From Heteronotia binoei (lineage: Eukaryota): DNA of 64,000 bases. The notes below the pieces were generated by a model that did not search any database, was not told where the DNA came from, and saw only the letters and a program-made list of their open reading frames with translations. A program made the position numbers and the translations under genes. Shown one piece after another: positions 24,105-59,245 of this stretch; the stretch's first letter is position 1; the number at the start of each line of letters is the position of its first letter. The DNA is taken from positions 52,824,001 through 52,888,000 of the forward strand of contig NC_083232.1 of the NCBI RefSeq assembly GCF_032191835.1, in the 5' to 3' direction.

Positions 24105-24272
24105 CAGGGCTTTTTTCCTGGAAAAAGAGGTGCTGGAACTCTCAAGAGGGAAATGAAGGCGAAACACACAGGTGCCTCTCATGAACTTTTAAACACTTTT
24201 CAGGAATTTTGTTTCTACAAAGAAGTTCTGTAACTCTGTTCCACCACTTTCCCCCAGAAAAAAAAAGCCCTG
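24105..24272. mobile_element. hAT MITE (CAGGGCTTTTT family, second subtype)
   Basis: Perfect 8-bp TSD ttcatatc. Confidence 0.9.
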
Positions 24273-28226: not shown

Positions 28227-28428
28227 CAGGGGTTTTTTTGTAGAAAAAGCCCAGCAAGAACTTATTTGCATATTAGGCCACACCCCCTGTTATCATCATT
28301 GTTTCACACAGGACTTTCTTGTAGAAAAAGCCCAGCAGGAACTCATTTGCATGATAGGCCACACCCCTGACACCAAGCCAGCCGGGACTGCGCTCCTGTG
28401 TGTTCCTGATTTTTTTAAAAAAGCCCTG
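28227..28428. mobile_element. hAT MITE (CAGGGCTTTTT family)
   Basis: Perfect 8-bp TSD ggtaacac. Confidence 0.92.
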
Positions 28429-29652: not shown

Positions 29653-31929
29653 CTCTCTCTCTCGGCTTGGCTTCGCGAACGAAGATTTAAGAAGGGTGCA
29701 ATAGTCCACGTTTGCTGCAGGCTCGCTGGTGGCTGACAAGACCAATGTGGGACAGGCAGGTCCGGCCACAGCGGCTGCAGGGAAAAGTCTGATTTAGGGT
29801 TGGTCCTGTAGCAGTGCGATTCTTCCTCAATCTCCTTTTGTCCTCAAGACCAGCTATGCGTGTGTTCTCAAAGGAAGAGACAGCCTGGTGGATGGTGTGC
29901 CTCCATGCTTTGCGATCTGAGGCTAGGTCAGACCACTGGTGATGGTTGATGTGACAGGTGCTAAGGGATTTCTTCAAGGAGTCCTTGTACCTCTTCTTTG
30001 GTGCCCCTCTATTTCGATGGCCGGTGGAGAGTTCGCCATACAGGGCAATCTTGGGAAGGCGGTGGTTTTCCATCCTAGAAATATGCCCTGCCCAGCGCAG
30101 CTGCGTCTTCAACAGCAGTGCCTCGATGCTGGTAACCTCTGCCCGCTTGAGGACTTCAGTGTTGGTCACAAAGTCACTCCAGTGGATGTTGAGGATGGTG
30201 CGAAGGCAGCGCTGATGAAAGCGCTCAAGGAGTCGCAGGTGATGACGGTATAAAACCCACGATTCGGAGCCATAGATGAGGGTTGTCATCACAACCGCTT
30301 TGTAAACATTGATCTTTGTGCCTTTTTTCAGATGCTTGTTGCTCCACACTCTTTTGTGCAGTCGGCCAAATGCACGGTTTGCCTTTGCCAGCCTGTTGTC
30401 AATCTCCTTGTCGATCTTGGCATCTGAGGAGATGATGCACCCCAGGTAGCTGAACTGCTGGACTGTCTTCAGAACTGATTCACCCACAGTGATGCAGGGG
30501 GGGTGATAATCTTCCTGGGGTGCAGGCTGGTGGAGAACTTCTGTCTTCTTCAGACTAACTTCTAGGCCGAATAGCTTGGCAGCCTCTGCAAAGCAGGACG
30601 TCATATGCTGCAGAGCTGATACCGAGTGGGAGACGAGTGCAGCATCATCAGCAAACAGTAGCTCTCGGATGAGTTTTTCCATTGTCTTGGAGTGTGCCTT
30701 TAGTCGCCTCAGGTTGAACAGGCTGCCATCGGTGCGATAGCGGATGTAGACACCATCGTCCTCATCTAGATCTACTGCGGCTCTTTGAAGCATCATGCTA
30801 AAGAAGATCGTAAAGAGAGTTGGCGCGAGAACGCAGCCTTGCTTTACACCTGTGCCTATTGGGAAGGGCTCCGAGAGGTCGTTGCAGTGTCTGACTTGGC
30901 CTCGCTGGTCTTCGTGTAGCTGGATGATCATGCTGAGGAACCTTGGGGGACATCCTAAACGTTCCAAGATTTGCCACAGGCCTTTCCTGCTAACGGTATC
31001 GAAAGCTTTGGTAAGGTCGACAAAAGTCACATACAGAGCCTTGTTCTGTTCCCTGCATTTCTCTTGGAGCTGCCTGAGAACAAATACCATGTCGGTGGTG
31101 CTCCTGTTAGCTCTGAAGCCGCACTGGCTCTCTGGGAGGAGTTCTTCTGCAATGGTGGGCACCAGTCTGTTCAGGAGTATTCTGGCAAGGATTTTGCCTG
31201 CGATGGAGAGCAGGGTTATCCCCCGGTAGTTGGAGCAGTCTGACTTTTCCCCTTTGTTCTTGTATAGGGTGATGATGATTGCATCGCGAAAGTCCTGTGG
31301 TAATTTGCCTTGTTCCCAGCAGGTGACAAGTACTTTGTGAAGTGAGCTATGTAGTACTGTGCCCCCATGCTTCCAGATCTCTGGTGGAATTCCATCAACT
31401 CCTGCTGCCTTGCCACTTTTCAGTTGCTTGATGGCTTTAACAGTCTCTTCTAGGGTGGGGATCTCATCCAACTCTGTTTTCACCGGTTGAAGTGGGGTGA
31501 GGTGGATTGCTGAATCTTGAACTACGCGGTTGGCACTGAAGAGAACCTGAAAATACTCTGACCACCGGTTCAGTATGGATGCCTTGTCTGTGAGGAGCAC
31601 TTGGCCGTCTGCACTATGCAAGGGACTCTGAGCCTGATATGATGGACCATATACTGCCTTCAGGGCTTCGTAGAACCCTCTTAAATCACCAGTGTCTGCA
31701 CACAGCTGGGTTCTCTCTGCAAGCTTGGTCCACCACTCGTTCTGAATGTCTCGAAGCTTGCGCTGGAGGTTGCTACATGCAGCGCGAAAGGTTGCTTTTT
31801 TCCCAGGACAGGAGGGCTGAGCAAGATGTGCTTGGTAGGCAGATCTCTTTTTTGCCAGTAATTCTTGGATCTCTTGATTGTTCTCATCAAACCAGTCCTT
31901 GTTCTTCCTTGTGGAGAAGTCCTCGGGTT
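29653..31929 (-). mobile_element. Young 5'-truncated RTE-clade LINE with open reverse-transcriptase frame
   Basis: 12-bp TSD CACCAACAATGT (29641-29652, 31930-31941) and (GA)n tail. RT motifs GVKQGCVLAP and LLFADDAAL, with a C-terminal CxxC..HxxxC. The frame is open from the 5' junction to the stop at 29687. Confidence 0.95.
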
Positions 31930-37140: not shown

Positions 37141-37258
37141 CAGGGCTTTTTTTGAGCAGGAATGCACAGAAACGCAGTTCAGGCTGGCTTGGTGTCAGGG
37201 GGTGTGGCCTAATATACAAAGAGTTCCTGTTGGGCTTTTCCTACAAAAAAAAACCCTG
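37141..37258. mobile_element. hAT MITE (short CAGGGCTTTTT family)
   Basis: TSD gtcctatg/gccctatg. Confidence 0.88.
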
Positions 37259-41010: not shown

Positions 41011-41233
41011 GGGGGGAAAAAAGGAGAAAAGCCATGTCAGCAAGGGGTATGCAATGGAGCTGGAAAGAAGCATTTAAAAAAAAAGCAATGAAAGGAAACA
41101 AAGCAGAGCAATCTAGATTTTCTTATTATGAGGAAAGACTAAATAGTTTTTAGTTTAGAAAATGAATGGAGATGCTTAAGAGCAACAAGCTTTTTCTCCC
41201 TCTCCCAAAAGACAAGAACCCAGGGGCTTCCAC

Positions 41234-42004
41234 CAGACCTGTAGCCACGGGGAGCACAGCCCCTCCATTCAACCTCCCTTGTGGCCCCTCCATTGGGTGG
41301 GGCCCCACTTCCCTATGTAGGACCCCTCCATTGGAGGGCCTCTATGACCCGTGGGAAAGGGTGGGCAGCCAGAGGGAGCAGTAGAAGGGTGAGAGGCCGT
41401 ACAGGAGCCCCGGCAGGGCTTCCAACGGCCTCTTGGCAGGGAAGGGTGGCAGGGGGTCATGGGGGGTTGAGCGTCTCTCTCCAGGAGCCTTCATGCCCCA
41501 GAGGAACGGGTAGCATGAAGGGGTAGAGAGGGGAGGCGGCCACCGCCGCGGGTTACAAAGGGGTTACTATATGAGTGAGTAGGAGAGGGCAGGCGGGGGG
41601 AGAAGGCGCGGGTAGCCCGATGGGGCAGACCAGAGCAGGGTCCTCTCTGCAGCTAGCATTGTGGGGCGTTGCTGCTGCTGGTTGGCAGGCTGGAAAGGCC
41701 AGCTCAAGATGCTCTTGATGGCAAAGGAGCTGCTGAATTTAGAGCCGGAAGGTGGGGCGGACGATGAGGAGGGTTTCTGGCAGTAGTCAGGGGTTTCTGG
41801 TCGGTGCCGGAGCGCAGCGAGGCCAGGGCAGCAGCGGGAACCGGGGGTGGTTGGGCCTGGTTGGGCAGCATGCAGTGCTGGGGGGGCTCCAGAATCCTTG
41901 ACGGCCAGCAGCATGCCCCTTTTTCTCCCCCCCTTTGGCGCCCCCCTCACTCGAACTTTTATCGCTTGGGCCCCTCCATCCAAGATTTTCTGGCTACTGC
42001 CCTG
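41234..42004. mobile_element. Non-autonomous hAT element (Pack-hAT) carrying a FOXQ1 fragment, inserted in an old CR1
   Basis: 8-bp TSD gcttccac/acttccac (41226-41233, 42005-42012; 7/8). TIRs cagacctgtagccac and revcomp cagggcagtagccag (11/15). The flanking CR1 sequence rejoins across the insertion. Confidence 0.8.
41300..41925 (-). pseudogene. FOXQ1: Decayed fragment of FOXQ1 C-terminal (post-forkhead) coding region
   Basis: KFSSSFAIKSILSWPF at 41693-41740 (FOXQ1 eh1-like KFSSSFAIDSIL..PF). PFYCSLWLP at 41363-41389 (FOXQ1 LYCPLRLP), followed by GPH..PME. Contains stops and frameshifts; no forkhead domain. Confidence 0.8.
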
Positions 42005-42180
42005 ACTTCCACTGAAGTTGATTTAGGACAGATGAAAAGAAATCGTTACTCAACAAATGAAAAATTGTGGAATTCACTGCCAGTGGACATTGTGATAAGT
42101 ATAGATGGCTATAGAATTAGTGGATTAGACAGATTAATGCAAGATGGGCCTATCAATGATGAGTAAAGGGAACTTCCAAG

Positions 42181-42353
42181 CAGGACTGGATCTACATTTT
42201 GGGGGGTGGGATTAAAAATGATGCCCCCTTATGGGCCCACTCTATCTTATGGGTCCATAGAATAGAATGAACTCCCTACCCAATTTGGCACACACCCCCT
42301 CTGGTGGCACCCAGGTTAAGCACCCCCTCTGCTCCCCCCTAGATCTGGCCCTG
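42181..42353. mobile_element. hAT MITE
   Basis: Ends caggactggatcta/tagatctggccctg; degenerate TSD cttccaag/ctcccatg. Confidence 0.65.
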
Positions 42354-42689
42354 CTCCCATGCACAAATCTCTGAATACCCTGCTAGGAGGCTTTGAGAAC
42401 CTCTGGTTAACTGGTTGTGACTGTATGAAATGGTAAGCCTGAATGGACCACTGGCATGATTCAGCAGTGCTCTGTTCTTATTTAGAGGTATTAGGTTGTG
42501 GAGGCACATCTGCACTGGTTTTATAATGCTAAAACCCAATTCCCGCTTGTGAATCCCTCTGGTTGTATTCAAAAGTTCTTCTCTTTATAGTCTATCGTCC
42601 TGCCCCCTGACTTTTCCACCCTTTGGATCCAAGTAAGAAACCCCGGATTCTAGGAAAGTTAGAAGCTTTGACAGGCAGCTTTTAGTTAA

Positions 42690-43330
42690 TGGAGGGGGGC
42701 GGCTGGAGAAGGGCGGTATCAACTATTCTATGTACTCAAAACGATGAGTTTACTCAGGTGTCACTTGTGGACTTTTCCATATCTTTTTTTTTGTTGTTGT
42801 TGTTAATAAGAAACCTGGAAGCAGAGCAAACGTAATTTCAAACTCTAGCGAAGCCGCTGGGATGGGTCGGGTGTGTCATCATTTGTGTAGCGTCACGGTC
42901 TCCCCTGCCAGGCAAAAGTGTTGTTGCATCGCTTCAGGGAAGACATTCGAAGCCTCCGCTTGACCACGGAAGAATCACCGCAAGCTTTGGCTCCAGCCGT
43001 TTCAGCCCAGGTGAGGAGATGCGGGACGGGGCCAGGAAGGGAACTGTGACTCAGTAAGTACTACTAAAACAACCCGATTTAAAGTTATCCGCTTATCTGA
43101 AGAAGGCTATTTAGGCCCAGCAGGGGGGACGGGCAGCGTCTGTTTTGAAGCCTGCTTGTTAACACCGCACTTAGAAACATTTTTTGTCACTTACACACTT
43201 TTGTAACGTCGCTGAAAATCTGCTGAACTGCCCCTCCTCTTCATCATCTCTTCCCTGGAAACAGAATCGCCACCTCTTTGTGATCGTTCGCCCGATGTAT
43301 TCTTCTTCGGACACTGCTGGTGTACAAAGT
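42690..43330 (+). promoter_or_regulatory. CpG-enriched candidate ABCB5 promoter and non-coding first exon (donor CAG|GTGAGG after 43010)
   Basis: Non-repeat, CpG-retaining stretch with GC boxes (gggggcgg near 42695, gggcgg near 42711), a CGTCA half-CRE near 42888, AP-1 TGACTCA at 43047-43053 and a strong splice donor. Lies about 4 kb upstream of the acceptor of the first coding exon. Confidence 0.55.
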
Positions 43331-43842
43331 AAGATTACAGAATTTCCTCCAACTTTTTGGGAGCTTCCTTCTTTACCGCCTGCTTCTCCTTGTGTTTTTT
43401 TGGGAGGAGGGCATTATCTTCAAAGTTAATCTTTTAAGAAATTCTGATTTACAGGCTGAAGGGAGGTTTTCATCTGTATGTAGCCTATCTTGTCAATCTG
43501 AAGATTTTAAACGTTTTGAATATAGTGGGGATTTAAGTTTGTGTTTGAAACAAGGAAATGATAAAAACCCCTCAGATTTAGAACACAGAAAAAAGACAGA
43601 AGGAAAAGGTAAGGATGTTGAAGGACTTTTTCTACATTTTCTGATGCGAATATACTTTTGCTTGGGATGTTCATAACTCCATTGCTGCTTCTTTCAATGT
43701 TCATATGGTTTTGTGCAGGTAGCTGTCATTAAAAAACAATTGCAGCACTTTGCCTTACTGCTAAAGTGCCTCAAGTAATCAAGGGGAGGGGGAGAGAAGT
43801 ACAAATACCTTTTCTAAGGTAGTGTGATAAGGCAGTTGTAGC

Positions 43843-44050
43843 TCATTGGCTTTCCCCATTCCAACCAGTTTCTGAAATGTGCATTGTATCTATGTCATCA
43901 TTCAGCACCAAACATTCCAGTTCCCACATCTTAAGCCATAGGCTTCTAGTACTGATATATGGGCACCTGAGGTGATTAGTCAGTGGGCCACATGGCAGCT
44001 GAGGTATCTGGTCTGCCAGTCCCCAAGTTGAAGGCTTCTCCTGAATAAAC
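43843..44050 (-). mobile_element. CR1 endonuclease N-terminal fragment
   Basis: RSLWLKMWELECLVLNDDIDTMHISETGWNGESQ resembles CR1 APE (NARSL..K..ELE..V....DI.GITETWWN). Confidence 0.75.
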
Positions 44051-44739
44051 ATAAGGATAGCAGAAATCTGCAAGCAGAAGTAAAAGCTTCCAGTCCTAGA
44101 GATAAAGTAGCTTTTCTGGGACTGTTGTTGGTTCCTAGTTTGTGGTATAATTGCTGTGAAGTGCCATATAATAGCTTTATTTTCTATCTAAGATTTTGTT
44201 TTTCTGACTGTCAGTTCTAAGATTGTTGCCAAGGTTTTATTTTAGCTTGGTCTTAATTTTAATTTAAAGCTATACATTGATCTTTATAATAAGAGCTGCA
44301 ATTCTAATGATGGGATGAATATGAAATTATGTATATGAGCAAGTGTTCTTGTCTGCTTCCAGCATAAGGGAATAATGCAGCAGACCCAAATTGCTTTAGC
44401 TTTTGATCCCGAAGCTATGAGACACAAATGGAGTTCTTCACCAGCATTCATTGTAGTAGAGGATACAGTCTGTTCATGCAAAGGAATATGGATTTTGGCA
44501 ATGACATTGAAATGCATAAGGAAGCATTGGATGCAGCAACTCCAGGAATTCTAGACTGGATTTTGTGTATTACGAATGCAAAATCAGAAATTCTCTAAGA
44601 GAAGACCTGGACCGTAGACCAGTTGTAAACATAGTAAATTATCTCAGCCATGTAATATAATTATTTATGCCCTTTCAATAGAATTATTTGTGCCTTCAAT
44701 TATTTCTACTCTTTCAAATAGAATTATTTGTGCGTTTTC

Positions 44740-45700
44740 ACTTTCAGTGAAGGCCCAAATGACAAATGTTCCCTACCTCTCTCTTTGTGACTTGGCTACA
44801 GTGATCCACACAGTGGTCACCTCCAGGCTGAACTACTGTAACTTGCTGTATATAGGACTACCCAGAAACTGCAACTGGTCCAGAATACAGTGATGCATAT
44901 TCTTACAGGAACATACTGCTCAGAAGTTTCCTATTTGTGTGTTATTGTTGGTAACATTTACTCTGGTTTTTAGCTTGGAATTGAATTTTAAATGTCTGGA
45001 TTTTAAAATTTTTATCTCTGGTTCTCATCACAATTATGTGTCTTGTAAGCTGCCCTGAGCCTACCTCGCAGGAAGGGTGGGATACAAATAAAAGGAAATT
45101 AATTAATTTGAGGCCCCGTAGTCAACCAGTGCTTTACCAGTTGCACTGGCTTCCAGTTTGATTCTGGATCAAGTTCAAGGTTTTGGTTTTAACCTTCAAA
45201 GCCCTATGCAGTCTGGGATCAACATACCTTCAGCTTTGTCTCTCCTGGTATGTCCCTCAAAGAGCTTTATGGACCAACATCTTCTGGTGATTCCCAGCCT
45301 AAAGGATATCTGACTAGCCTCAACCAGTGCCAGGCCCTTCTCAGCTCTGGTGCTGGCCTGATAGAACACTCTCCCAAGTAAGATTTGGGCCCTGCAGGAC
45401 CTAATGGAGTTCCTTAGGGCCTGTAAAATAGGAATGTTCTGGCAGGCCTATAGTTGAGGTGACGGAAGTCCCATCTGGTTTGACCTCCCCCTGTCCAGTT
45501 CTGCTGTTGTTTTGTCTTGTTTGCCTTCCCATCCATCCATTTGCATCAATGCTAGCCAATAGCTATTGACATACATAGGCAGAGCCTCTGCTGAGAACAT
45601 AGGTATTAAATTGTGTTATTGACACCAATCAGATTGTTTTAACAGTGAATCTGTATTTAATGAGTTTAATGATTATTTATAACTATGTCTAATTGTTGTG
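44740..45700 (+). mobile_element. L2 fragments (rearranged or nested)
   Basis: VIHTVVTSRLNYCNLLYIGLP, LHWLPV and FKVLV..FKAL motifs, with an internal L2 3' terminus at about 45050-45100. Confidence 0.8.
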
Positions 45701-45930
45701 TTTATATTAGTGATAAAACAATTTAATATAAATTAATGATAAAATGATATGGCGATAATTAATTCCTGTCACCCCATTCAATAGGTGATTCTTTTTTTAA
45801 GTTACGGGGGTGGAGGGGAGGCAGGAATTGGAATATACAAAAAGAGTTACTGGTATATAAAAAAACAAGTGCATAAAAAGTACAGCACTAACTGGTTATA
45901 TGTCCTTATAGGTAGTAATATTTATTACAT

Positions 45931-46226
45931 GAAAAGTAGAGGTAGTCCCCTGTGCAAGCACCAGTAATTTCCAGCTCTGGGGTGACATCGCATCATGACA
46001 TTTTCATGGTAGACTTTTTATGGGGTGGTTTGCCATTGCCTTCCCCAGTCATCTACACTTTACCCCCAGCAAGCTGGGAACTCATTTTACTAACTTCAGA
46101 AGGATAAAAGGCTGAGTCAACCTTGAGCTGGCTACCTGAACCCAGCTTCCACTGGGATTGAACTCAGGTCGTGAGCCGAGCTCAGACTGCAGTACTGCAA
46201 CTTACCACTCTGCACCACGGTGCTCC
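45931..46226 (-). mobile_element. Sauria SINE, full length
   Basis: Perfect 12-bp TSD tatttattacat (45919-45930, 46227-46238). Confidence 0.93.
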
Positions 46227-46515
46227 TATTTATTACATCTAGAGCACCTCAAATAAGCTTTAGAGAGTAGCCATGTTGGTCTACAGTAGAACAATTAAAA
46301 TATGAGTCCAAAAACACCTTAAAGAACAACAAGATTGTCAGCGTACAAGCTACTTAAATTTAGCAACATCAATTGATTCAAGATGCAGTGGGCAGGATAC
46401 AAAGATCATATGGCCTCTATTTCATAACAACAGAAATTGTTGTTATGTTTAATGTCCTAAATGGCTTTGGGTTAAGATTTTTGAAGAATCCAGATAGCCA
46501 GTTAATTCTTTTGTT

Positions 46516-46685
46516 CAGGGGTGGAATTCTAGCAGGAGCTCCTTTGCATATTAGGCCACACACCCCTGATGTAGCCAATCCTCCAAGAGCTTACAAAAAA
46601 GAGCCTTGTAACCTCTTGGGGGATTGGCTACATTGGCGTGTGTAGCCTAATATGCAAAGGAGCTCCTGCTAGACTTCTACCCCTG
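46516..46685. mobile_element. Palindromic hAT MITE (170 bp hairpin)
   Basis: Arms of about 75 bp are near-perfect inverted repeats; perfect TSD cttttgtt. Confidence 0.92.
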
Positions 46686-47225
46686 CTTTTGTTTAATTTG
46701 ATTTAATTTTCTCTGGTGGTGAGGTAGGCGAAGGTGACAAGTGATGAAACTCTTTCACTGGAGACACCTCCCCTCTGGAGTACCTCCACCTTGAGGTTCA
46801 CCTGACACTTTCCTTATTTGCCTTTAGATACCTGGCCAGAGCATTTCTTTTTAACTGGGCTTTAAATTAAGTGCTCCATCTGCTTTAGCTCTGCTTACAT
46901 CCTGGCTTCTAGCTGAAGGACTGTCTTAACATTACTGGAATGTTTTAGTCAGTTTACTACTGTGTGCTTTTATGGCTTATTTTTATGCTGTGGTTATATG
47001 ATTTTATTGTACCATTTTATTGTGCGAGCTGCCTCAAGCAGGCTTCTGGAAAAGCAGCATATGCATTTTCTAAAGATAAAAAAAAGTTATGAAGGATGAT
47101 TTAAATAAAAATTAATATGTTTTTAAAATGGGCGTGCTACCTCAATAATATTCTCTTTGCTCTCTCTATGCAGATTTGTGGTGAATGCAGTTTTCTGAAC
47201 TGGAACTATAACACAGAACAGAACA

Positions 47226-47274
47226 ATGAATGGTCACTGGAAAACTCAAACCATAAAGGAAACATCCAAACCCG
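47226..47274 (+). CDS. ABCB5: ABCB5 probable first coding exon (exon 47174-47274; ATG at 47226)
   Basis: ctctatgcag| acceptor at 47173 and an in-frame stop upstream of the ATG. MNGHWKTQTIKETSKP+G|gtaaaa; phase 1 matches the next exon. Confidence 0.6.
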
Positions 47275-47482
47275 GTAAAACTGATATTTTTAGTTGTTTA
47301 CTAGTATATTGATAGCTCCACTACTTCCTGCTTATGATGTCTTCAAATGCAAAACAAAAAAAATGAACCTTTTAAATTTTAAACTGAGAGCATGAAACTT
47401 TATCCTGTAACAGTCTTAATTTGTAGTATGCATGAATGTTTTTAATAAAAAGGTGTTTTGGAGATCTTTTATGCATAGAATC

Positions 47483-47560
47483 ACCATAAGTCAGAAACAA
47501 CATGAGGGAACCATAAGTCAGAAGCAACATGAGGGAACCATAAGTCAGAAGCAACATGAG
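47483..47560. repeat. 27-bp tandem repeat x3
   Basis: accataagtcagaa(a/g)caacatgaggga repeated. Confidence 0.9.
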
Positions 47561-47725
47561 CAACACACACATTATTTGCTTTGTCAGGTCCCCTAGGTGA
47601 CTAAATTGTGCTAAAAACAATGCAAAGCCTAATGCTGATCCCTTGTACCAGAATTTCACAATTCTGTAAATTGCGACTTTGAAACCTGTATGAAGCTTTA
47701 TTGAAGTTAGTATGTTCTCATTATT

Positions 47726-47865
47726 TAAAAAAGGTAAAGGTAGTCCCCTGTGCAACTACCAATCATTTCCAACTCTGGGGTGACGGCGCATCACAACGTT
47801 TTCACGGCAGATTTTTTTACAGGGTGGTTTGCCATTGCCTTCCCCAGATTATTCCCCAGTAATAA
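47726..47865 (-). mobile_element. Sauria SINE, 5'-truncated
   Basis: 3' half only; TSD ttctcattatt (47715-47725, 47866-47876). Confidence 0.88.
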
Positions 47866-49268
47866 TTCTCATTATTACAGGCCACATTTATAAAACTATC
47901 TTACTTAAGTCACATTTAGATAGCAAACTGATCTGTTTTCATAATCTAGTTGTAAGTGAAATACTTGATTTGCATTTAGATAGCAAATTGATCTGTTGTC
48001 ATAATATAGTGGTAAAGTGAAATACAGGGCAGGCAGGTTCAATGGACTTGTTTTTCCAGAGGCAATTTTTGCATGTGGCAAGGGTTCTTCTTAATAGATT
48101 TGGGTAGTCAAAGAAGCTGAGGCAAGATACCTTGGCAACACAAATATATCTTACTTACAGGAAAGAAAACAAGCCACAGCATATGTAAGATCAGTTTCTT
48201 ACATCTCTTTTGGTTGCTGAGGTGGCTTTCTACAGCAACAACTGTTCCCAGCCACTCCAGGTCTCCAATCAAGCCCCCTTGCTACTGCCATCTCTTCCTC
48301 TTTAATCCTTTATAACCTGCCTAAGTGCAGCTTTCTTTGTGTGAACATCACCCAGCAATCATGCAGAGGTTAGTTCTAGTGCCTGCACCTGACACCCCCT
48401 TATTAGGAAGGCCGAAGTCTAGGAGGAAGTGACCCTGCAGCCACTTTGATGGAACCTGGCTGCCAGTATGCTCTAAGCCAAGAGCAAGTTACCTGAGAAT
48501 ACTGTACCCAACCCCACTTCAAGGGGGTTCTTCTGCTGATGACACTACCTGCTGTTCCTGCAGCAATTAATCAATAAGAGGCTGTCATGCAGAAAGTAGA
48601 TGTGAGATACTTTCAGTCGCTACATGGGAAAATGTAGAATCTACCCTGTATGCATTTTCCCATGTTAATGTCCAGATACACATCTTCCTGTGTGAGGATA
48701 TTATACAGCCACTATTGGAAAGTAGCAAAGCCTTATTTTATGCTGATGCAACAGCAGATGGGGTTAATTTAGTTTACCGAACTGTGTGACTACTTCTTGT
48801 CACAGAGCCTTTTGATTGCCTTGTTCTGTAACACAATTTGATATGCACCAATTATAATGTAGAATGATTTGCCTGCAGTTAAAATATGATAAACATTCTC
48901 AAATGACATCGGTAACGAATTACTTTTGCCTTTTATGTCTTCTTTATACTGTGTTCTCAGAATATTTTTGCTCGTTAAACACTGGATTGTATTGTTTGAA
49001 ATGTTTGCATTTGAACACCTTGATCCTAAAATGCCAACCTGTGTATAAATGAATAGAGAAGTAAATCTCAGTGTCATTGGTGGGGGGAGGTATTTTTTAA
49101 ATGGGGCTTCCTCTCAGTTTTGTATAGAATGCCATTCTCAGTGAAGCCAGTGCTACTTACTGGTATATTTAAGGTCCAGAACTTGAATCTGCAGAACAAG
49201 TAAACAGTACCTGAAGCTTATAGGTGCCTTGAATTGCAACCCTACTTATCCTGCTTTCTCATCAACAG

Positions 49269-49329
49269 AGCATCCAGACAATGCCTATGACAACCCTGCT
49301 TTCCAGTTGGATGAAATGGTTGCACAAAA
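49269..49329 (+). CDS. ABCB5: ABCB5 coding exon 2
   Basis: catcaacag| ... |gtaggt. EHPDNAYDNPAFQLDEMVAQ(K); phases 1/2 fit both neighbouring exons. Confidence 0.75.
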
Positions 49330-49413
49330 GTAGGTTTTCCATAAGCTGTTTGAGATATTTGTGCTTAAAATGACTTCCACTAATCTATTTTTTTCCTGCA
49401 TAAATCTCTTTAG

Positions 49414-49471
49414 AAAGAAAAATGCAGAGTCTAATAAAAAGAAGAAGAAGATGGTTGGATTTTTCCAGTTG
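49414..49471 (+). CDS. ABCB5: ABCB5 coding exon 3
   Basis: ctctttag| ... |gttagt. KKNAESNKKKKKMVGFFQL is the lysine-rich 'VGxFxL' exon typical of P-glycoproteins. Confidence 0.9.
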
Positions 49472-50225
49472 GTTAGTGTGTGATCTGTTTATTTTTTTTC
49501 CTCATCACTTTTATGGGCCAGTTCACATGTTTTCTCCAGCACACCTGTATGTAGTGAAATCAAAAGCATCTTTCCAACCTGCTTACATAACTGCACACAG
49601 GAAGGTAACCCATGGGAGGTTACATGCTTATTTGAATGTGGGATTTCCCTTAAACCTGCCTCTCTTTTTTTAGCATCCTTGGCTATTCAGAGATCCTGCA
49701 TTCAAACAATTCTGGGATCTTCTTGTTTGGTGGTTACTGTCTACCATAGTCTGAGAGCAGTGGGGAAAGATTGAGGAAGAAGTACATGAGCTCAGATCCC
49801 ACTCCTGATCCTTCAGGTTTCATTTCTTTATTTTTTAAAAAATTAAAATGTAATATGCAAATACCTCTCTCTTTTTTCATCATAATACCAATTCAACAAG
49901 TTCAGTGATAACTCTGGAATTTATATGGCTCTAACTGGGCCTCAGACTGAATGCCAGTCAAGTGAGCAGTCAACAACCTTGTCCCCACCCCAAGTGAGCA
50001 GAAGGCTGGAGAGAACGGTACAGTTACCAATTTTGGGCTAGGAAATTCCTGGAGATTTGGGGGTGAAGTTTTTTTGGGGGGAGGTAGGTCAGCAGGGATA
50101 TGATGCCATAGAGTCTGTCCTCCAAAGCTATCATTTTCTCCAGGTGAACATGATAAAGAAGAGGAGTTGGTTTTTTATATCCTGCTGAACTTCACCTTTG
50201 TTACCTTGTCTTCAGAATCAGTTTT

Positions 50226-50360
50226 NNNNNNNNNNNNNNNNNNNNNNNNNNNNNNNNNNNNNNNNNNNNNNNNNNNNNNNNNNNNNNNNNNNNNNNNNNN
50301 NNNNNNNNNNNNNNNNNNNNNNNNNNNNNNNNNNNNNNNNNNNNNNNNNNNNNNNNNNNN
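50226..50360. other. Assembly gap (135 N) in an ABCB5 intron
   Basis: Run of n. Exon phases on both sides join without needing a missing exon. Confidence 0.99.
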
Positions 50361-50781
50361 ATTTACCAGGGCAGAATCTTCCCTGTGGCTTTAACACCAA
50401 GCTTTCTCAAGTTTCTGTCAGTGTAGCTGTTATGCTTGTCACTTTTCATCCCTGTTGTCTGTCAGTTTACCATTCCCTCTCTGAATTCTCAGATGTCGAT
50501 TGCTTATAATAGCCTACAATTCAGTCTGTGTTTTGGCCATCCCACACACAGATTCACGCCCCTGCACAATTTAGCTTCATAACATACACATTTGTACTTC
50601 TGCTTATGTGAACCTCTGTGATCCTGATGATTATTTTATTTAATCTTTTGAAATACCACCTGTTACTCAAATTTTTCATTATTTGAATGTTTGGACTTTT
50701 CTCAGATGCTTAAATACATGACTATGGTTCTCTTCCACAATGTCTTCTGTATTTTACCAGTTTTTCTTTGTATTGATCTAG

Positions 50782-50929
50782 TTCAGTTTTGCAGACTCAC
50801 TAGATATTCTTTTAATGCTACTGGGCATCATCACAGCTGCAGCAGTTGGACTTGGGCAGCCTTCTGTTATCATTATTTTTGGACAGATCACAAACAGCTT
50901 TGTGGCAACTGGCCAAAATGTGTCTACAA
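50782..50929 (+). CDS. ABCB5: ABCB5 coding exon 4 (elbow helix, TM1)
   Basis: gatctag| ... |gtaagt. FSFADSLDILLMLLGIITAAAVGLGQPSVIIIFGQITNSFVATGQNVST. Confidence 0.95.
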
Positions 50930-51824
50930 GTAAGTCACTAAACTTACCAAAATAAGTTAAGAAAACTGGAAGATAACAGTTCAGATTTTTAGACAGAGGC
51001 TGAACAGCAAATTAGCATGTAACATGATTAAGATATTTTAAGATATGCAAGGATAAAACAAGAATAACCAGTTTATATGGTCAACAGTTGTTTGGATTTA
51101 TTTAAGAGGAAACAACAGTGAAGGAATATCTATGTCAAAATAGGAGATAAATGTGTAAAAGTATTTCTAATTGTGGGAAGTTTACTGAAACTTCGTTGCT
51201 CCTCCCCATTTGTCTCCTCTCAAGCATGGAGGTAACAAATAGAATTATTTTCTTTGTTGGGGTAGGGTGCAGTTCTATGACAGAGAGATGCATTTCAGTT
51301 TTCATTGCATTACTTTACAATCACCATACCAACATATAAAAGTTATCTGTGACTTGTGACAGTTTATATTGAAAAAAATGTTGTTAGGTTTTAAGTTGCT
51401 ACTGGACTTTTATTTTGCTACAAGATATTAACACTACAATAACTACTGTTGAATCTTTTTTCTTAAAGGAAAATATTAATTTGATTGAATAAAGGGCTGC
51501 TTTAGAGAAGGTTGCAAAACATGTGCAGAAGATTTCTCATTGGCAAATGATCAGCTGCTATGAAAGTTGTGTGTGATCTAGAAGTTCCAAACCCTACACA
51601 CTTAAACCTGTGGTTCTCTATTTTTTTCTCCCCAGAATTCTAAGTGGTGGCTTACATGCACTGATGTTTTTTTTATCTACATGGGGCCCAACTGTTGGCT
51701 GTTAGATATAGTGATGGTTTTTCTACAATTGCAGGACCATATAAAAATGCCATGTTGACATTGTGTTTGAAAACAGTTTGCAATACATTTTTCAACTATA
51801 CTCTTGCTACCATTTATTTTATAG

Positions 51825-51882
51825 ATGGGAATAATTCAGAGTGTCCAGCTGGTGCAACAAGTATAGAAGCCGACATGACCAC
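51825..51882 (+). CDS. ABCB5: ABCB5 coding exon 5 (extracellular loop 1)
   Basis: ttttatag| ... |gtaagt. (N)GNNSECPAGATSIEADMT(T); phases consistent. Confidence 0.92.
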
Positions 51883-52049
51883 GTAAGTTCCCATACAGTT
51901 ATTATTTTGAGAAGTTATAACTTTATCTTGCTATAAAGGCAAATTTTGTTTTTGTCTTTCAGTGTATGATTACAATCACACTCCTTTTTTCAGTATACTA
52001 ATGTGTTCAACAGAATGCTGCTTATTTTAGCTGTTAATGTCTTCATCAG

Positions 52050-52241
52050 GTTTGCTTACTACTATGTTGGACTTGGTTGTGGTGTGTTGCTCCTCAGCTC
52101 CATTCAGGTCTGGGCCTTTTTGACTAGTGCTGCAAGACAAACAGCAAGGATACGTGATAAATTCTTTTTTGCTGTTCTTCACCAAGAGATGGCCTGGTTT
52201 GATACCATCCGCATTGGAACACTGAATACCAGACTTACTGA
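52050..52241 (+). CDS. ABCB5: ABCB5 coding exon 6 (TM2, ICL1)
   Basis: 192-bp exon, as in ABCB1. FAYYYVGLGCGVLLLSSIQVWAFLTSAARQTARIRDKFFFAVLHQEMAWFDTIRIGTLNTRLT. Confidence 0.97.
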
Positions 52242-53083
52242 GTAAGAAATTTCTATTCTGCTGTTGGGGATGGGGTATGGAAGGAAGTAACTGTCTTCTG
52301 TCTGGAGGATACCTAGCCAGATTTTGTGGGTCTATCTGCCAAATCCAGCTAGAGACTTGGAACCACATAAAAGGTGATTGCCACTCCTGTATGTCTAAAT
52401 AGTTGGTGAGCTGCATGCATTGTATGTGCTCTTTTCCTTCCTGATCTGCTAGAGATATGCATGTGGATCACTTTTGAAGTGGTAAAAATTCTGCCAAAAG
52501 AAAACAGAAGGGCTGCATCAATTACAGAGATTTTAGAAAATAGGGTCACTGATGGACACACTGAATTCTTGAAGGTCTTATTTGTCTCATTAAGTTCAAC
52601 AGAAAGCAAACTTATGCATATGTTGCCAGAGTTCTCTTCTTTTATAAAGAAAACAGTTGTGGGCTATCTCTTGTTTATGAAATCTGCCATTGGGTCTCAT
52701 GTACTGGTTCTATGGGAATGCCATATTGTTTGGGAAATTGTGGATATAGGAAGGGTTTATGAACTATAGAAAGAGAAAATTTCTCCCGCAACATAGAAGA
52801 ATGCATGCATGGATTCTTCCTTTTATTAAAAAAAAAAAAGGAAAATATTCACGTGAGATGAGGGTACCCCTATGTATGCTTTAGACCTCCAGTATTCATA
52901 GGAAATAGCTAGGTTGAGGCACACATCTGTAATCTGCAATGGTAATTATTTGGGATTAGGCTGATTTGGTGAGGCATAGTTCCAATGTCACTCTAGGTTC
53001 AAATGCCTCAATTTGTCTTTTTTTTTAACAATAACCAAAGTCATGGTGTCACCCAAATGATCCATATGCATATGTAAGTCACC

Positions 53084-54741
53084 TAGGGTTGCCAAGTCCA
53101 ATTAAAGAAAAATCTGGGGACTTTGGGGGCGGAGCCAGGAAACATTGGGGTGGAGCCAGGAACAAGGATGTGACAAGTATAATTGAACTCCAAGGGAGTT
53201 CTGGCCATCACATTTAAAGGGACAGCACGCCTTTTTAAATGCCTTTCTTCCATAGGAAATAATTAAGAATAGGGGCACCATCTTTTGGGGCTCATAGAAT
53301 TGGACCTTCTGGTCCAATTGTTTTGAAACTTGGGGTGTATTTTGGGGAGAGGCACTAGATGCTATACTAAAAATCTGGTGCCTCTACCTCAAAAAATAGC
53401 CCCCCCCAGAGCCCCCAATACCCACGGATCAATTCCCTATTATTCCCTATGGGAATCGTTCTCCATAGGGAATAATAGAGTGCCTAGTAGACATTTCCCT
53501 CCCCTCCCCCCCGCTTTCTGACGACCCTGGGGATTGGCAACCCTAGGTCCACCAGCGGGGCCAGGATAACAGAGGCTGTGGAAGAGAGGGCCATCAGTAG
53601 CTGTGAGTTGACATGGGCAAATGGAACCTCTGTAGATAGAGAGAGAGTACCCGCTGGAACACCAAACACCACGAAACCTAAGAAAACACACAGAACATTG
53701 CAGCCTTATCGCATGGCCCTAGCTCAGTTTACTAAGTGGGACTTACTTGGGGAGGCGCTGGGTTGCCAGCTCCAGGTCGGGAAACCCCTGAAGCTTTGGA
53801 GGCAGAGCTTGTTAAGGACACAGACCAGGGGGGGGGGGATGCAAGCCATGCCCTCGAGGGCGCCCACCCTCCTCCAAAGCTGCCGTCTTTTCCCGGTGGG
53901 GGCGGGGCTCCCTGCAGCCAGGAGCTCCGTGGCCATTCCAGGAGCTCTCCAGGCCTCACTTGGAGAAAGGTAGCCCTCCCGAGCGGGCCCCTGGCTGCGG
54001 GGAGGGTGTCTCCCAGGCCCGGAAGGAAAGGAGGGAGGCCGAGGTGCTTTGCCTGCGGGCTCCCCAGAAAGGCAGGCACTTGCTGGAGGGCTGGCCGGGC
54101 TGCGGTCGGTGGCGCTGGGGCTGCCCGCCTCCTTCTCCTCGGGGCCGTGCGCAGGCAGGGCAGGGCAGAGAGGGCCATGGGGCAAGGGCAGCAGTGCAGG
54201 GCCCGCCTGGTGGGAGCCCCGCCGCCTTACCCTCCTTGACGCCGGGCAGCTTGGACTGGTTGATGCCGATTTCGGCCATGGCGGCGCCCGCAGCTCCTCA
54301 CCTGGCGTCGGGGCTCCTCCGGAGCAAGGAAGGCTGCAAGTGAGGCAGCCGCTGCCTGTGCCCCGTCGCCCTCCTCGTGAGCAAGACGCCGCTGCAGCCG
54401 CGCCAGCTTCCCTCCCTCCCTCCGGGGACAGCCGGCGCTCCACCACCAGGGCGCGGAAGAGCCCCCAGCCAGCCGGGCTGAGGTGGGAAGGAAGCTGCGT
54501 GGCCGCCACCCAAGAGAAAAGGACTCCAAGAGGGAGCGCTGAGCTCCAGCCCACCCCGCTGGCGCGGCGCGAGACCTTGGTCGGCAGCCAGAACCCAGCC
54601 AGAGGCCTGCTCGCCCTCGGCTTGGCTCGGGCAGGTGGGAAGGGCCGCCATTTCCCCCCCGCTTTCCAGATGTTTGGGGAGCGGGGGGAGGAGGCTCCAA
54701 ATCGGGGGTCCCCCGCCCAGGCGGGGGATTTGGGAACCCTA
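53084..54741. mobile_element. Composite non-autonomous hAT element (Pack-hAT) carrying a CCDC50 fragment
   Basis: Perfect 8-bp TSD AAGTCACC (53076-53083, 54742-54749). Outer TIRs tagggttgccaagtc and revcomp tagggttcccaaatc match 13/15. Contains a complete MITE (53084-53545), an older MITE (53759-53977) and GC-rich non-repeat cargo. Confidence 0.9.
54231..54279 (-). pseudogene. CCDC50: Captured first coding exon of CCDC50 (with 5' flank and intron 1)
   Basis: Minus strand gccgccATGG Kozak, then MAEIGINQSKLPGVKE+G|gtaagg (49 coding bp). Recalled human CCDC50 begins MAEVSIDQSKLPGVKE(V) with the same phase-1 intron. No downstream CCDC50 exons are seen. Confidence 0.85.
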
Positions 54742-55975
54742 AAGTCACCCACAGGAGGGTCATCCTTTAACATGTCAAGAGCCTATATACAGGTGCAGTC
54801 AGGGCAATTATTATTGGGACCTTCTGCCAGGTATACACCAGCATCCAATATTTAATCCAATGCCTTATATGAGTATGCAGGTTCTTAGAAATTAAGAAAA
54901 TGGATAGCAAAGGAAATTAGCAAACAGCATACAAAAACACACAGAGATTAAATAAAAGTTCTGTAAATCCTAGCTTTTACTAAATCCTAGCCTTAAAAAG
55001 TTACTAATATAAAGGAAGGATAAGGTGGTGGGATACAAAGGAAGAAAACGTATGAATCTATCCACTGAGTGGAATCCAAGAAGGTTTGTTGGAATAAATT
55101 GGTGAGAGCAGGGTAGGAAAGCAGAGCACAGTCTTTGGGGGTTGCCTGTCTTGGATAGCAGGGCCAAAGCAGAGTCATGCACACATTTCCACTTTGCACT
55201 CCCAAATGAGGGTTTGGAGCTAGTTGCAGGAATCTGGTATTAAGATGGGACCCAGCAGCTAGAACAAAATGCTGGGCATTCTCAGGGCTTCCTTTATATT
55301 ACTTTAGAATGATAGGAGATTAAGTCGATGTGAGTGAATATGTCCATTTCCAAGCAAATTTCCAGTTACTTTTCTTTCTCCCTTTGAAATAGAGGATTGG
55401 CTTCATTGCTCTGAGATCTCCCTTCTTCCTCTCAGATTAAAGAGATACATACTTTTCTAATATTCCAAAGCTTGGGTAAGGTCAAATAAATAAATAAATA
55501 AAAAGAATTTGTAGGCCTTCTGGAAGATCTATGGGGGGCCTCCCTTTGAAGCAGGGGCAGCCCAGCCTGAGTGAGTCATGGAAAGCGTATTCGGGCATGG
55601 GGAGGTGGAGGGAGGCAGGTGGGGGAAGGTGGGTGCAGGGAGGTGGTGGGTGCAGTGAGAGAGGGTGCCTCATGGCACTCCTAGGCCAAGTGGCACCCAA
55701 GGCGGCCACCTACTTGGCCTACTCCCATGCGCCAGCCCTGTGTGTTGTGTTTTCATGCCACTGTTCTCTTCTGACTTGCTGATAAGTCCCTGTGGCTGAT
55801 TCTCACTCTCTGTGTATAAAGAGAATGGATCTGTTGCTTCCATCTCAATTTTTGAATCCCAGGATGTCTCCAGAAGGAAAAGGAAAAAAGAAACTGGGTT
55901 GGTGGGTGAGGCGTTCCTCCAGTAATAATCAGATAATAGAATTTGTGCATGAAATATGACACATTTATTGTGCCT

Positions 55976-58861: not shown

Positions 58862-59245
58862 GACAGGGAAAAGCTTTTCTTCCTTTCCCCATAATACTAG
58901 AACCTGGGTCATCCACTGAAGCTGAATTGGAAAGTCAGGACAGACAAAAACAAGTACACAGCATAATATAGCTAATTTGTGGAACTCACTACCACAGGAT
59001 GTGGTCATGGCTGCCAACTTGGGAGACTTTAAAACAGGATTGGACAAATTCATTGAATCTATCAATGACTCCTAGTCTTAATGGATATCTACTTCCTCCA
59101 ATACCGGAGGCACTATGACTCTTTGTATCTGTTGTATCTAGGCAAGAGAATACTGTTGCAATTGTGAACTTGGGGCCCTCCGAACAAAAATTTTGGGTAT
59201 GGGGCTAGGTGGACCTTTGGTTTGATCCAGCATGGTGGTTTTGAT
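58862..59245 (+). mobile_element. CR1 3' fragment (others at 15662-15835 and 17790-17900, minus strand)
   Basis: ggacagacaaaaac..LWNSL..gatgtggtcatggct..ggattggacaaattcat..ggtttgatccagcatgg terminus. Confidence 0.75.

What the first reader, a model, noticed from the sequence alone, without database searches (positions are those of the whole stretch)
41234..54741. Candidate Pack-hAT gene-capture system in a gecko-like genome, biased to GC-rich gene 5' and CpG-island DNA
Two independent captures by two hAT MITE families occur within 13.5 kb. Both cargos are GC-rich CpG-island sequence, and both landed in or next to the 5' part of a gene. Established knowledge: plant Pack-MULEs preferentially acquire GC-rich gene fragments and insert near gene 5' ends, and Pack-TIR capture has been reported at lower frequency in animals. 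Inference: finding two in one 64-kb window suggests a genome-wide, possibly undescribed, vertebrate Pack-hAT population that redistributes promoters, CpG islands and exons.
Basis: inference. Interest (0 to 1): 0.8.

Follow-up and report, generated by a model that had tools for sequence, protein, structure and literature searches.

The report
Composite hAT transposons carrying GC-rich DNA
Two small cut-and-paste transposons in a lizard-type genome each carry GC-rich DNA, and one placed a gene's promoter and first exon backwards into an intron of a drug-pump gene. This kind of capture is already known in animals, and I could not test here whether it is common in this genome.

Summary
Both elements are real insertions. 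Element 2 (53084-54741) has TAGGGTTGCCA-type ends and a perfect 8-bp target duplication (AAGTCACC), a quality absent from shuffled controls. Element 1 (41234-42004) has weak ends and a 7/8 duplication, which alone is chance level. A paralogous repeat copy at 58871-58994 runs straight through its site, so it is an insertion too.

Element 2 is composite: a complete 462-bp MITE, 1.1 kb of foreign DNA, and a 102-bp mini-MITE. The foreign DNA holds an old MITE, a true CpG island, and a minus-strand first exon (Kozak ATG, 16 codons, GT donor). Only the outer ends share a duplication, so I read it as a macrotransposon-like move. The exon resembles CCDC50 exon 1, but only from memory.

Element 1 has the same build, but its interior is unidentified and is not a formal CpG island.

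The host is an ABCB1/4/5/11-type gene. The N gap is intronic and irrelevant.

No parent copy or orthologous site could be fetched, so the genome-wide "Pack-hAT system" claim is untested. First readers noted at least 12 similar, unverified candidates on other pieces of this genome. Pack-hAT elements in animals and hAT capture in Anolis are already published.

The parts
41226..41233 (.). Element 1, left copy of the target-site duplication (GCTTCCAC)
   Evidence: It matches the right copy at 7 of 8 positions. The paralogous repeat at 58871-58994 has a single copy.
41234..42004 (.). Element 1: a 771-bp hAT-like non-autonomous element (GC 63%, CpG observed/expected 0.39)
   Evidence: The outer ends CAGACCTGTAGCCAC / CAGGGCAGTAGCCAG match at 11 of the first 15 positions. 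GCCCCTCCAT motifs occur three times near the left end and once near the right end.
41249..41823 (.). Element 1 interior of unknown origin: GC-rich and CpG-enriched, with no ORF, Pfam or Rfam match
   Evidence: No second copy exists in the window.
41824..42004 (.). Candidate complete 181-bp MITE forming the right edge of element 1. Its inner left end is CAGGGCAGCAGC, matching the right end at 11 of 12 positions.
   Evidence: (pair I2). Its own left flank AGCGAGGC does not match ACTTCCAC.
42005..42012 (.). Element 1, right copy of the target-site duplication (ACTTCCAC)
58871..58994 (+). Paralogous "empty site": another copy of the old interspersed repeat into which element 1 inserted
   Evidence: (E = 1.7e-5 across the junction). 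The best alignment score comes when the element plus exactly 8 bp are removed.
53076..53083 (.). Element 2, left copy of the target-site duplication (AAGTCACC)
53084..54741 (.). Element 2: a 1658-bp composite hAT-like element
53084..53545 (+). MITE A: a complete 462-bp element with a perfect 15-nt inverted repeat, of which 12 nt are the element's own ends and 3 nt are flank (CpG observed/expected 0.23)
   Evidence: (pair I8). Its right flank GGTCCACC matches AAGTCACC at only 4 of 8 positions.
53546..53757 (-). Cargo, spacer part. If the exon is real, this would be intron 1 of the donor gene.
   Evidence: No repeat match in the window.
53758..53978 (+). Cargo: an old, diverged but end-to-end copy of the common TAGGGTTGCCAG MITE family (called B here)
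   Evidence: One search shows an end-to-end alignment with the 219-bp copy at 25896-26114.
53986..54639 (-). Cargo: a CpG island (GC 72%, observed/expected 0.60) with promoter/5'UTR-like DNA upstream of the exon
54231..54279 (-). First-exon-like coding start. It has the Kozak context GCCGCCATGG, then 16 codons (MAEIGINQSKLPGVKE) plus 1 nt, then a GTAAGG donor at 54230. An in-frame TGA lies six codons upstream.
   Evidence: The resemblance to the CCDC50 N-terminus rests on memory and on the first-reader note s1-321089, not on a tool test.
54640..54741 (+). 102-bp mini-MITE, or right end, related to the right end of MITE A. It supplies the outer right inverted repeat.
   Evidence: Its left flank CAGGTGGG matches AAGTCACC at only 2 of 8 positions.
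54742..54749 (.). Element 2, right copy of the target-site duplication (AAGTCACC)
42791..43190 (+). Native CpG-rich region (observed/expected 0.76) with a GT donor at 43011. I take it as the putative promoter and first non-coding exon of the host ABCB gene (inferred).
52050..52244 (+). Host ABCB exon just upstream of element 2, matching residues 110-173 of ABCB1. The intron holding element 2 runs from 52245 to about 56557.
   Evidence: (E = 2e-20)
50226..50360 (.). Assembly gap. It is intronic, lying between the exons 49414-49471 and 50782-50929. Its left edge lies inside a MITE-like repeat.

Best explanation
Both features are non-autonomous hAT-type transposon insertions of a composite kind. 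In each, a complete small MITE forms one edge. About 0.6-1.1 kb of GC-rich non-MITE DNA follows. A second, shorter or degenerate inverted-repeat end forms the other edge. The 8-bp target duplication surrounds the whole unit.

The most likely mechanism is that a hAT transposase paired the outer end of a MITE with a second end some distance away at the donor locus. It then moved everything in between. This is macrotransposon or "end-bypass" transposition, the eukaryotic equivalent of a composite transposon.

In element 2, the co-mobilised DNA is a contiguous genomic piece of a host gene's 5' end: promoter/CpG island, first coding exon, and about 0.7 kb of intron 1 that includes an old MITE. It now sits antisense in an early intron of an ABCB1/4/5/11-type transporter gene. 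The exon is probably CCDC50 exon 1. In element 1 the co-mobilised DNA is unidentified.

**Shown:** the boundaries, the target duplications, the composite anatomy, the CpG-island status of element 2, and the exon-like signals.

**Inferred:** the transposase-mediated composite move, the donor identity, and any promoter activity at the new site.

The window gives no valid estimate of how common such elements are in this genome.
For: **Element 2**
- The target duplication is 8/8 with 11/12 outer ends. Four pairs in the window reach this quality (8/8 with at least 11/12 ends), and none did in five shuffles.
- TAGGGTTGCCA-type ends occur 11 times in the window against 1.5 expected.
- MITE A is complete, with a perfect 15-nt inverted repeat.
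- The inner junctions lack matching duplications: 4/8 for the right flank of MITE A and 2/8 for the left flank of the mini-MITE. The outer pair is 8/8.
- The right end is related to the right end of MITE A but is clearly a different copy.
- The cargo contains a full old MITE of another subfamily, as random genomic DNA would.
- The cargo has a CpG island at 72% GC and observed/expected 0.60, while MITE A has 0.23 and the window background 0.16.
- The cargo has a Kozak ATG, an upstream in-frame stop, 16 codons and a GTAAGG donor.

**Element 1**
- A paralogous empty site exists.
- An inner left end matching at 11/12 defines a 181-bp MITE at the right edge.

**Precedents**
- Ac/Ds macrotransposons move the DNA lying between two element ends (PMC9910405 and PMC3260210).
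- hobo_AC in Anolis incorporates genomic DNA (PMC3014272).
Against: - No donor or parent copy was found. None lies in the 64-kb window, and no genome, read or orthologous data could be reached.
- The CCDC50 identity rests on memory only. Protein searches found nothing.
- Element 1's outer ends are at chance quality on their own, and its interior has no recognisable host feature.
- Most single-copy animal Pack-TIRs are reported to arise by transposition-independent gap filling (PMC8277862).
- No hAT transposase gene lies in the window.
Confidence: 0.6

Rival explanations
1. Transposition-independent gap filling. A plain MITE was already resident at each site with its target duplication. A later double-strand break inside it was repaired by copying GC-rich DNA from elsewhere through template switching. 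On this view the cargo was never mobilised by a transposase.
For: [quoted passage not shown] It also leaves the original target duplication intact. Both elements look single-copy within the window.
Against: - The two ends of element 2 are not two halves of one element. The left part is a complete MITE with its own perfect right end. The right part is a diverged, separately structured end.
- Reported gaps take out only about 5% of the element.
- 57% of reported cases have the parent within 15 kb, but no parent lies within 53 kb upstream or 9 kb downstream.
Confidence: 0.2
2. The GC-rich interiors are not unique captures. They are the normal internal sequence of multi-copy non-autonomous hAT families, which may have arisen from an old capture that then amplified. 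This applies especially to element 1.
For: - Element 1's interior has no gene-like feature.
- It carries repeated subterminal motifs.
- Anolis non-autonomous hAT families of 0.6-3.4 kb with family-specific interiors are common (PMC3014272).
- Multicopy Pack-hAT families exist in frog and alligator.
Against: - No second copy of either interior lies in 64 kb, although related MITE ends are frequent there.
- The interior CpG content is two to three times that of the resident MITEs.
- Element 2's interior has a canonical first exon.
Confidence: 0.15
3. The genome holds a large, active Pack-hAT population that preferentially acquires CpG islands, promoters and first exons and reinserts them near gene 5' ends.
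For: - Two cases lie within 13.5 kb (this report).
- First-reader notes on other pieces of the same genome list at least 12 further hAT-with-cargo candidates in about 253 windows. Several have CpG-island or first-exon cargo. All are unverified.
- Four of the five multicopy animal Pack-TIRs had GC-rich parents.
Against: - Only n = 2 is available here, and only one has identifiable host cargo.
- The other notes come from the same kind of untooled reader and are not independent.
- No genome-wide count, control or parent mapping was possible.
Confidence: 0.3
4. There was no mobilisation at all. A native CpG island or gene start happens to be bracketed by independently inserted MITEs, and the matching 8-mers are coincidence.
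For: MITEs are dense in this window.
Against: - An exact 8/8 match at the exact outer ends has a chance of about 1.5e-5 per pair.
- No shuffle reached this quality.
- No exon-2-like sequence for the orphan exon was found anywhere in the window (using motifs recalled from memory).
- Element 1 has a paralogous empty site.
Confidence: 0.03

Closest known systems
Pack-TIR / Pack-hAT elements of animals (Tan et al. 2021, PMC8277862)
   Same: A hAT-type non-autonomous element with inverted ends and a target duplication encloses 0.1-5 kb of non-transposon DNA that includes a gene's 5' part. A frog hAT-N8_XT case carrying a 5'UTR is a published example.
   Different: - Here the ends belong to two separate MITE copies, not to the two halves of one element.
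- The parent copy is unknown, so that paper's defining criterion of a unique parent at 90% identity or more is untested.
- The paper attributes most single-copy cases to gap filling, which fits this anatomy poorly.
Ac/Ds macrotransposons of maize (Huang and Dooner 2008, cited in PMC3260210 and PMC9910405)
   Same: Two nearby hAT element ends in the proper orientation act as one transposon. They carry the intervening host DNA and make a single 8-bp duplication at the new site.
   Different: Macrotransposons were shown genetically in maize with known Ac transposase. Here the event is inferred from one product. No transposase source and no donor locus are known. The elements are MITE-sized and the host is a squamate-like vertebrate.
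hobo_AC and hobo-N families of Anolis carolinensis (Novick et al. 2010, PMC3014272)
   Same: These are lizard hAT elements with 11-nt TAGG-type ends (TAGGCTTGMTC, matching TAGGGTTGCCA at 8 of 11 positions) and 8-bp duplications. They have incorporated large pieces of genomic DNA that contain older transposon fragments.
   Different: - Those are amplified families with tens to hundreds of copies, and no gene or promoter cargo was reported.
- Here the copy number is unknown, and the cargo includes a CpG island and a first exon.
- The terminal sequences differ, so family membership is not shown.
Pack-MULEs of plants
   Same: They show a bias toward GC-rich gene 5' fragments and insertion near gene 5' ends.
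   Different: They belong to a different superfamily (Mutator, with 9-11 bp duplications and long inverted ends). The cargo sits between the ends of one element. They occur in thousands of copies. None of these points is shown here.

Membership tests
hAT superfamily, non-autonomous element | 8-bp target-site duplication | tested here: met
   Element 2 is 8/8 (AAGTCACC). Element 1 is 7/8, and a paralogous empty site shows one copy.
hAT superfamily, non-autonomous element | Short terminal inverted repeats beginning 5'-YARNG | tested here: met
   Element 2 has TAGGG at both ends. Element 1 has CAGGG at the right end and at the inner left end, but CAGAC at the outer left end, which is degenerate.
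hAT superfamily, non-autonomous element | Ends shared with a multi-copy family or an autonomous partner that encodes a hAT transposase | tested here: inconclusive
   TAGGGTTGCCA ends occur 11 times against 1.5 expected. Element 1's end type occurs only once exactly. No transposase ORF lies in the window; the only long ORF is a LINE reverse transcriptase.
Pack-TIR (criteria of PMC8277862) | Internal non-TE sequence of 100-5000 bp flanked by both termini of the same TIR element | tested here: inconclusive
   The size criterion is met (about 0.6 and 1.1 kb). However, the termini come from different copies or subfamilies, and each unit contains a whole MITE at one edge.
Pack-TIR (criteria of PMC8277862) | A unique parental copy elsewhere in the genome at 90% identity or more and 80-120% of the length, not itself flanked by TEs | not testable with these tools
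   There is no access to the rest of the genome. No copy lies in the window.
Pack-TIR (criteria of PMC8277862) | Cargo derived from a host gene | tested here: inconclusive
   Element 2 has Kozak ATG, 16 codons, a GT donor and an upstream stop inside a CpG island, but no database match. The CCDC50 match comes from memory only. Element 1 has no gene-like feature.
CpG island (Gardiner-Garden and Frommer: at least 200 bp, GC at least 50%, observed/expected at least 0.6) | All three thresholds met | tested here: met
   Element 2 meets them: 40 passing windows over 54084-54753, with GC 72% and observed/expected 0.60 over 53986-54640. Element 1 does not: observed/expected is 0.39-0.48 and 2 of 78 windows pass.
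Macrotransposon / composite transposon | Two separate element ends bracket non-TE DNA, with a target duplication around the outer ends only | tested here: met
   In element 2 the outer pair is 8/8 and the inner junctions are 4/8 and 2/8. Element 1 shows the same pattern more weakly: the inner left end's flank AGCGAGGC does not match the duplication, while the outer pair is 7/8.
Macrotransposon / composite transposon | The donor locus shows the same two ends flanking the same segment | not testable with these tools

The most novel reading that the evidence does not exclude
This squamate-like genome holds an unusually large population of composite hAT/MITE units, on the order of hundreds to more than a thousand. 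They arise when MITEs that sit in open chromatin next to promoters are mobilised together with neighbouring DNA through a second or surrogate end. This would systematically copy CpG islands, promoters and first exons into new genes. It would be a vertebrate counterpart of plant Pack-MULEs, far above the at most 38 per genome reported so far in animals.
Probability: 0.25. Interest if true: 0.7.

Novelty: new member of a known kind. Interest (0 to 1): 0.42.

Why it matters
If confirmed with its donor locus, element 2 would be a clean natural example in a vertebrate of two MITE ends acting as one transposon and relocating a complete promoter, CpG island and first exon. It now sits antisense inside another gene, where it could drive antisense or chimeric transcripts.

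The published animal Pack-TIR survey had no hAT annotation for its only lizard genome, so squamates are a real gap. A genome-wide count would show whether promoter shuffling by hAT elements is a notable force in these genomes. As a single locus it is an ordinary, if tidy, instance of a known phenomenon.

Tried and rejected
1. **Reads.** No expression, splicing, copy-number or parent evidence could be obtained from reads.
2. **Sequencing runs.** Run searches found only tiny DNA runs and RNA runs holding 3-14% of the words. No whole-genome run was found.
3. **Protein searches that all came back blank.**
   - the 349-aa ORF across the cargo
   - the 107-aa ORF starting at the exon ATG (the length filter excludes proteins over 187 aa)
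   - the 30-aa N-terminus against 1.8 billion representatives
   - Pfam on all cargo ORFs and on the 20-23 aa exon peptide
   - PDB
   - ESM Atlas
   - a full-text search for the peptide

   The CCDC50 assignment therefore remains a recollection. My memory of the human N-terminus is MAEVSIDQSKLPGVKE|V, which gives 13/16 identities and the same exon phase. The first-reader note s1-321089 says the same.
4. **Orthologous empty site.** The third homologue search used the upstream ABCB exon. It found a relative's Logan contig (L001, 85.7% identity over 51666-52503), but that contig stops 580 bp short of element 2.
5. **Rfam.** Nothing reached gathering score in either element. There were only sub-threshold hairpin matches.
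6. **Parent in cis.** No second copy of either interior lies in the window.
7. **Native-gene reading.** No exon-2-like motif for the orphan exon was found in any frame of the window (using motifs from memory).
8. **Chance.** Rejected for element 2 by shuffles. For element 1 it was rejected only because of the paralogous empty site.
9. **Nested insertion of MITE A into an older Pack element.** Rejected, because the target duplication abuts MITE A's own left end and no second left end follows MITE A.

Full report
**Boundaries and chance**

The region holds two sharp GC peaks of 63% and 72%, against about 40% background.

Element 2 spans 53084-54741.
- It begins with TAGGGTTGCCA and ends with the reverse complement of TAGGGTTCCCA.
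- The 8 bases on either side are both AAGTCACC.
- I scanned every pair of positions 60-5000 bp apart in the window for an 8-bp direct repeat enclosing a 12-nt inverted repeat. The real sequence gave four pairs with 8/8 plus at least 11/12, and five local-composition shuffles gave none. Going by the listing from the first scan, the other three are short MITEs or MITE hairpins.
- The TAGGGTTGCCA motif occurs 11 times against 1.5 expected. It is therefore the end of a resident repeat family.

Element 1 spans 41234-42004.
- Its ends, CAGACCTGTAGCCAC and CAGGGCAGTAGCCAG, match at only 9 of the first 12 positions. Its flanks, GCTTCCAC and ACTTCCAC, match 7/8.
- Pairs of that quality are as common in shuffles as in the real sequence: 55 against 85.
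- What establishes it is a second copy of the older interspersed repeat that surrounds it. The sequence at 58871-58994 aligns across the junction with the 771 bp absent and only one copy of the 8-mer. The alignment score peaks when the element plus exactly 8 bases are removed.
- Both are therefore genuine insertions with 8-bp target duplications. That length, together with YARNG-type ends, is the signature of hAT elements (established knowledge).

**Anatomy of element 2**

It is not one MITE with a filled middle. Its parts, from left to right, are:
- **53084-53545: a complete 462-bp MITE ("A").** It has a perfect 15-nt inverted repeat and low CpG (observed/expected 0.23).
- **53546-54639: 1.1 kb unrelated to A.** This holds a 212-bp spacer, then an old but end-to-end copy of the common 220-bp TAGGGTTGCCAG MITE at 53758-53978, then a 650-bp CpG island with GC 72% and observed/expected 0.60. 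Forty 200-bp windows in this region pass the Gardiner-Garden criteria.
- **54640-54741: a 102-bp unit.** Its outer end is the right terminus of the whole element. Its sequence is related to the right end of A, but it has a 48-nt insertion and many differences. A degenerate left end lies at 54640.

The 8 bases next to A's inner end (GGTCCACC) and next to the mini-unit's inner end (CAGGTGGG) match AAGTCACC at only 4/8 and 2/8. Only the outermost ends share a duplication. This is the signature expected if the whole 1658 bp inserted as one unit using the left end of one element and the right end of another.

**The cargo of element 2**

On the minus strand the island contains GCCGCCATGG. After it come 16 codons (MAEIGINQSKLPGVKE), one further base, and then GTAAGG. 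An in-frame TGA lies six codons upstream.

This is what a first coding exon with its 5'UTR and promoter looks like. The spacer and the old MITE would then be the start of intron 1.

From memory, the human CCDC50 protein begins MAEVSIDQSKLPGVKE, with the first intron after the first base of the next codon. That gives 13/16 identities and the same phase. A first-reader note on this same stretch (s1-321089) names CCDC50 as well.

No tool could test this. The homologue search only admits candidates of 0.55-1.75 times the query length, and the longest stop-free query of 107 aa excludes a protein of 300-480 aa. Searches of representatives, Pfam, PDB, the Atlas and paper texts were blank. No exon-2-like motif occurs anywhere in the window, so the exon is an orphan here.

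**Anatomy of element 1**

An inner sequence at 41824 (CAGGGCAGCAGC) matches the right terminus at 11/12, better than the outer left end does. It delimits a 181-bp MITE-like unit at the right edge. Its flank AGCGAGGC does not match the duplication.

Element 1 thus repeats the design of element 2 in mirror image:
- a degenerate outer end;
- about 590 bp of GC-rich DNA (GC 64%);
- a complete small MITE.

The interior's CpG observed/expected is 0.48, three times the background of 0.16 but below island thresholds. It has no ORF with a family match, no Rfam match and no second copy in the window. It does carry four direct copies of the motif GCCCCTCCAT. Whether it is host DNA is open.

**Host gene and the gap**

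Two exons identify a full-length ABCB1/4/5/11-type transporter on the + strand:
- the exon at 50782-50929 matches residues 45-85 of solved ABCB4 structures (E = 4e-9);
- the exon at 52050-52244 matches residues 110-173 of solved ABCB1 structures (E = 2e-20).

The next exon starts near 56558. Element 2 therefore lies antisense in a 4.3-kb early intron.

A CpG-rich segment at 42791-43190 (observed/expected 0.76), with a donor at 43011, is the likely promoter and first exon (inferred). Element 1 ends about 790 bp upstream of it.

The N run at 50226-50360 lies between the exon that ends ...MVGFFQL at 49471 and the exon that starts FSFADS... at 50782. These look like adjacent stretches of the protein, though only the second exon was aligned. 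It abuts a MITE-like repeat on its left and is kilobases from both elements. Continuity across it cannot be shown, and the argument does not need it.

**Mechanism**

The anatomy fits composite or macrotransposon transposition best. In this mechanism two hAT ends that belong to different nearby copies, or one true end and a surrogate end, are paired, and the DNA between them moves with them. This has been demonstrated for Ac/Ds in maize.

[quoted passage not shown] It fits less well here, for three reasons:
- the two ends are not complementary halves of one element;
- a whole MITE with its own inner end is present;
- no parent lies nearby, whereas 57% of reported cases have the parent within 15 kb.

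Gap filling is not excluded without the donor locus or an orthologous site.

A possible reason for a GC-rich, 5'-end bias (inference): hAT elements tend to insert in open chromatin near promoters, so the DNA next to a MITE is often a CpG island, and GC-rich ends find surrogate partners more easily in GC-rich DNA.

**Comparison with what is known**

- Pack-type capture by hAT elements in animals is published. Tan et al. reported 370 Pack-TIRs in 100 genomes, 208 of them hAT, including a frog hAT carrying a 5'UTR. Four of the five multicopy cases had GC-rich parents.
- In Anolis, hobo_AC and its 15 non-autonomous families incorporate genomic DNA that contains older repeats.
- The survey of Tan et al. 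had zero hAT annotations for its only lizard genome. Squamates have therefore not really been surveyed for gene-fragment capture.
- This locus is a new member of a known kind, with a composite architecture that the published pipeline says it would miss (the "end bypass" remark).

**The genome-wide claim**

One window cannot test it. Inside the window, the five CAGGGCTTTTT-type MITEs with duplications carry no cargo, and neither does the plain TAGGGTTGCCAG copy at 25896-26114.

First-reader notes on other pieces of this genome list at least 12 further hAT-with-cargo candidates in about 253 windows. Several are described as having CpG-island or first-exon cargo. These are unverified notes by the same kind of reader. 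They make a scan worthwhile but are not evidence.

**Limits**

No whole-genome run is indexed. The only related contig recovered stops 580 bp before element 2. As a result, donor identity, copy number, age, polymorphism and expression all remain open.

Noticed in passing
window:29690-31621 (- strand): A 644-aa ORF with a reverse-transcriptase domain (RVT_1, E = 6e-36). It is a fairly intact LINE, and it accounts for the CpG-rich windows at 29581-31070.
   Followed up: partly
window:5156-5271, 14159-14324, 24105-24272, 28227-28428, 37141-37258: Five short MITEs (116-202 bp) of one family with CAGGGCTTTTTTT ends and 7-8/8 matching 8-bp duplications. None carries extra DNA.
   Followed up: partly
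window:18606-19851: A 1246-bp candidate hAT element with ends TAGGGGTGTCAAATG / CAGGGGTGTAAAACT and flanks cactaatg / ctctaatg (7/8). Its interior is not GC-rich overall and appears to contain a nested SINE-like insertion and a short CpG-rich patch at 19221-19550.
   Followed up: no
window:46518-46690: A nearly perfect palindromic MITE (CAGGGGTGGAATTCTAGCAGGAGCTCC...) in an ABCB intron. Its inner hairpin arms produce a false 8/8 "duplication" in the scan.
   Followed up: no
window:62313-62384 (- strand): The only Rfam match above gathering score in the window is a tRNA-like sequence (38.3 bits). Given the many SINE copies around, it may be the head of a tRNA-derived SINE rather than a gene.
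   Followed up: no
window:47483-47560: A 27-bp tandem repeat with 2.9 copies and 98% matches, in the intron after the ABCB start-codon exon.
   Followed up: no
window:53331-53403: A hairpin inside MITE A gives sub-threshold microRNA-precursor matches (MIR3627 at 29.8 bits against a gathering score of 64). This is probably just MITE foldback structure.
   Followed up: no
L001:89-927 (Logan contig of run SRR13336341) vs window:51666-52503: A contig from another sample is 85.7% identical across an ABCB exon and its flanking introns. It comes from a related species and could serve for orthologous-site tests if longer contigs were available.
   Followed up: partly
window:53000-54850: Several metatranscriptomic RNA runs under three organism labels hold 6-11% of the 31-mers of this stretch. 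I could not determine which part is transcribed (a MITE, or the exon and 5'UTR).
   Followed up: no
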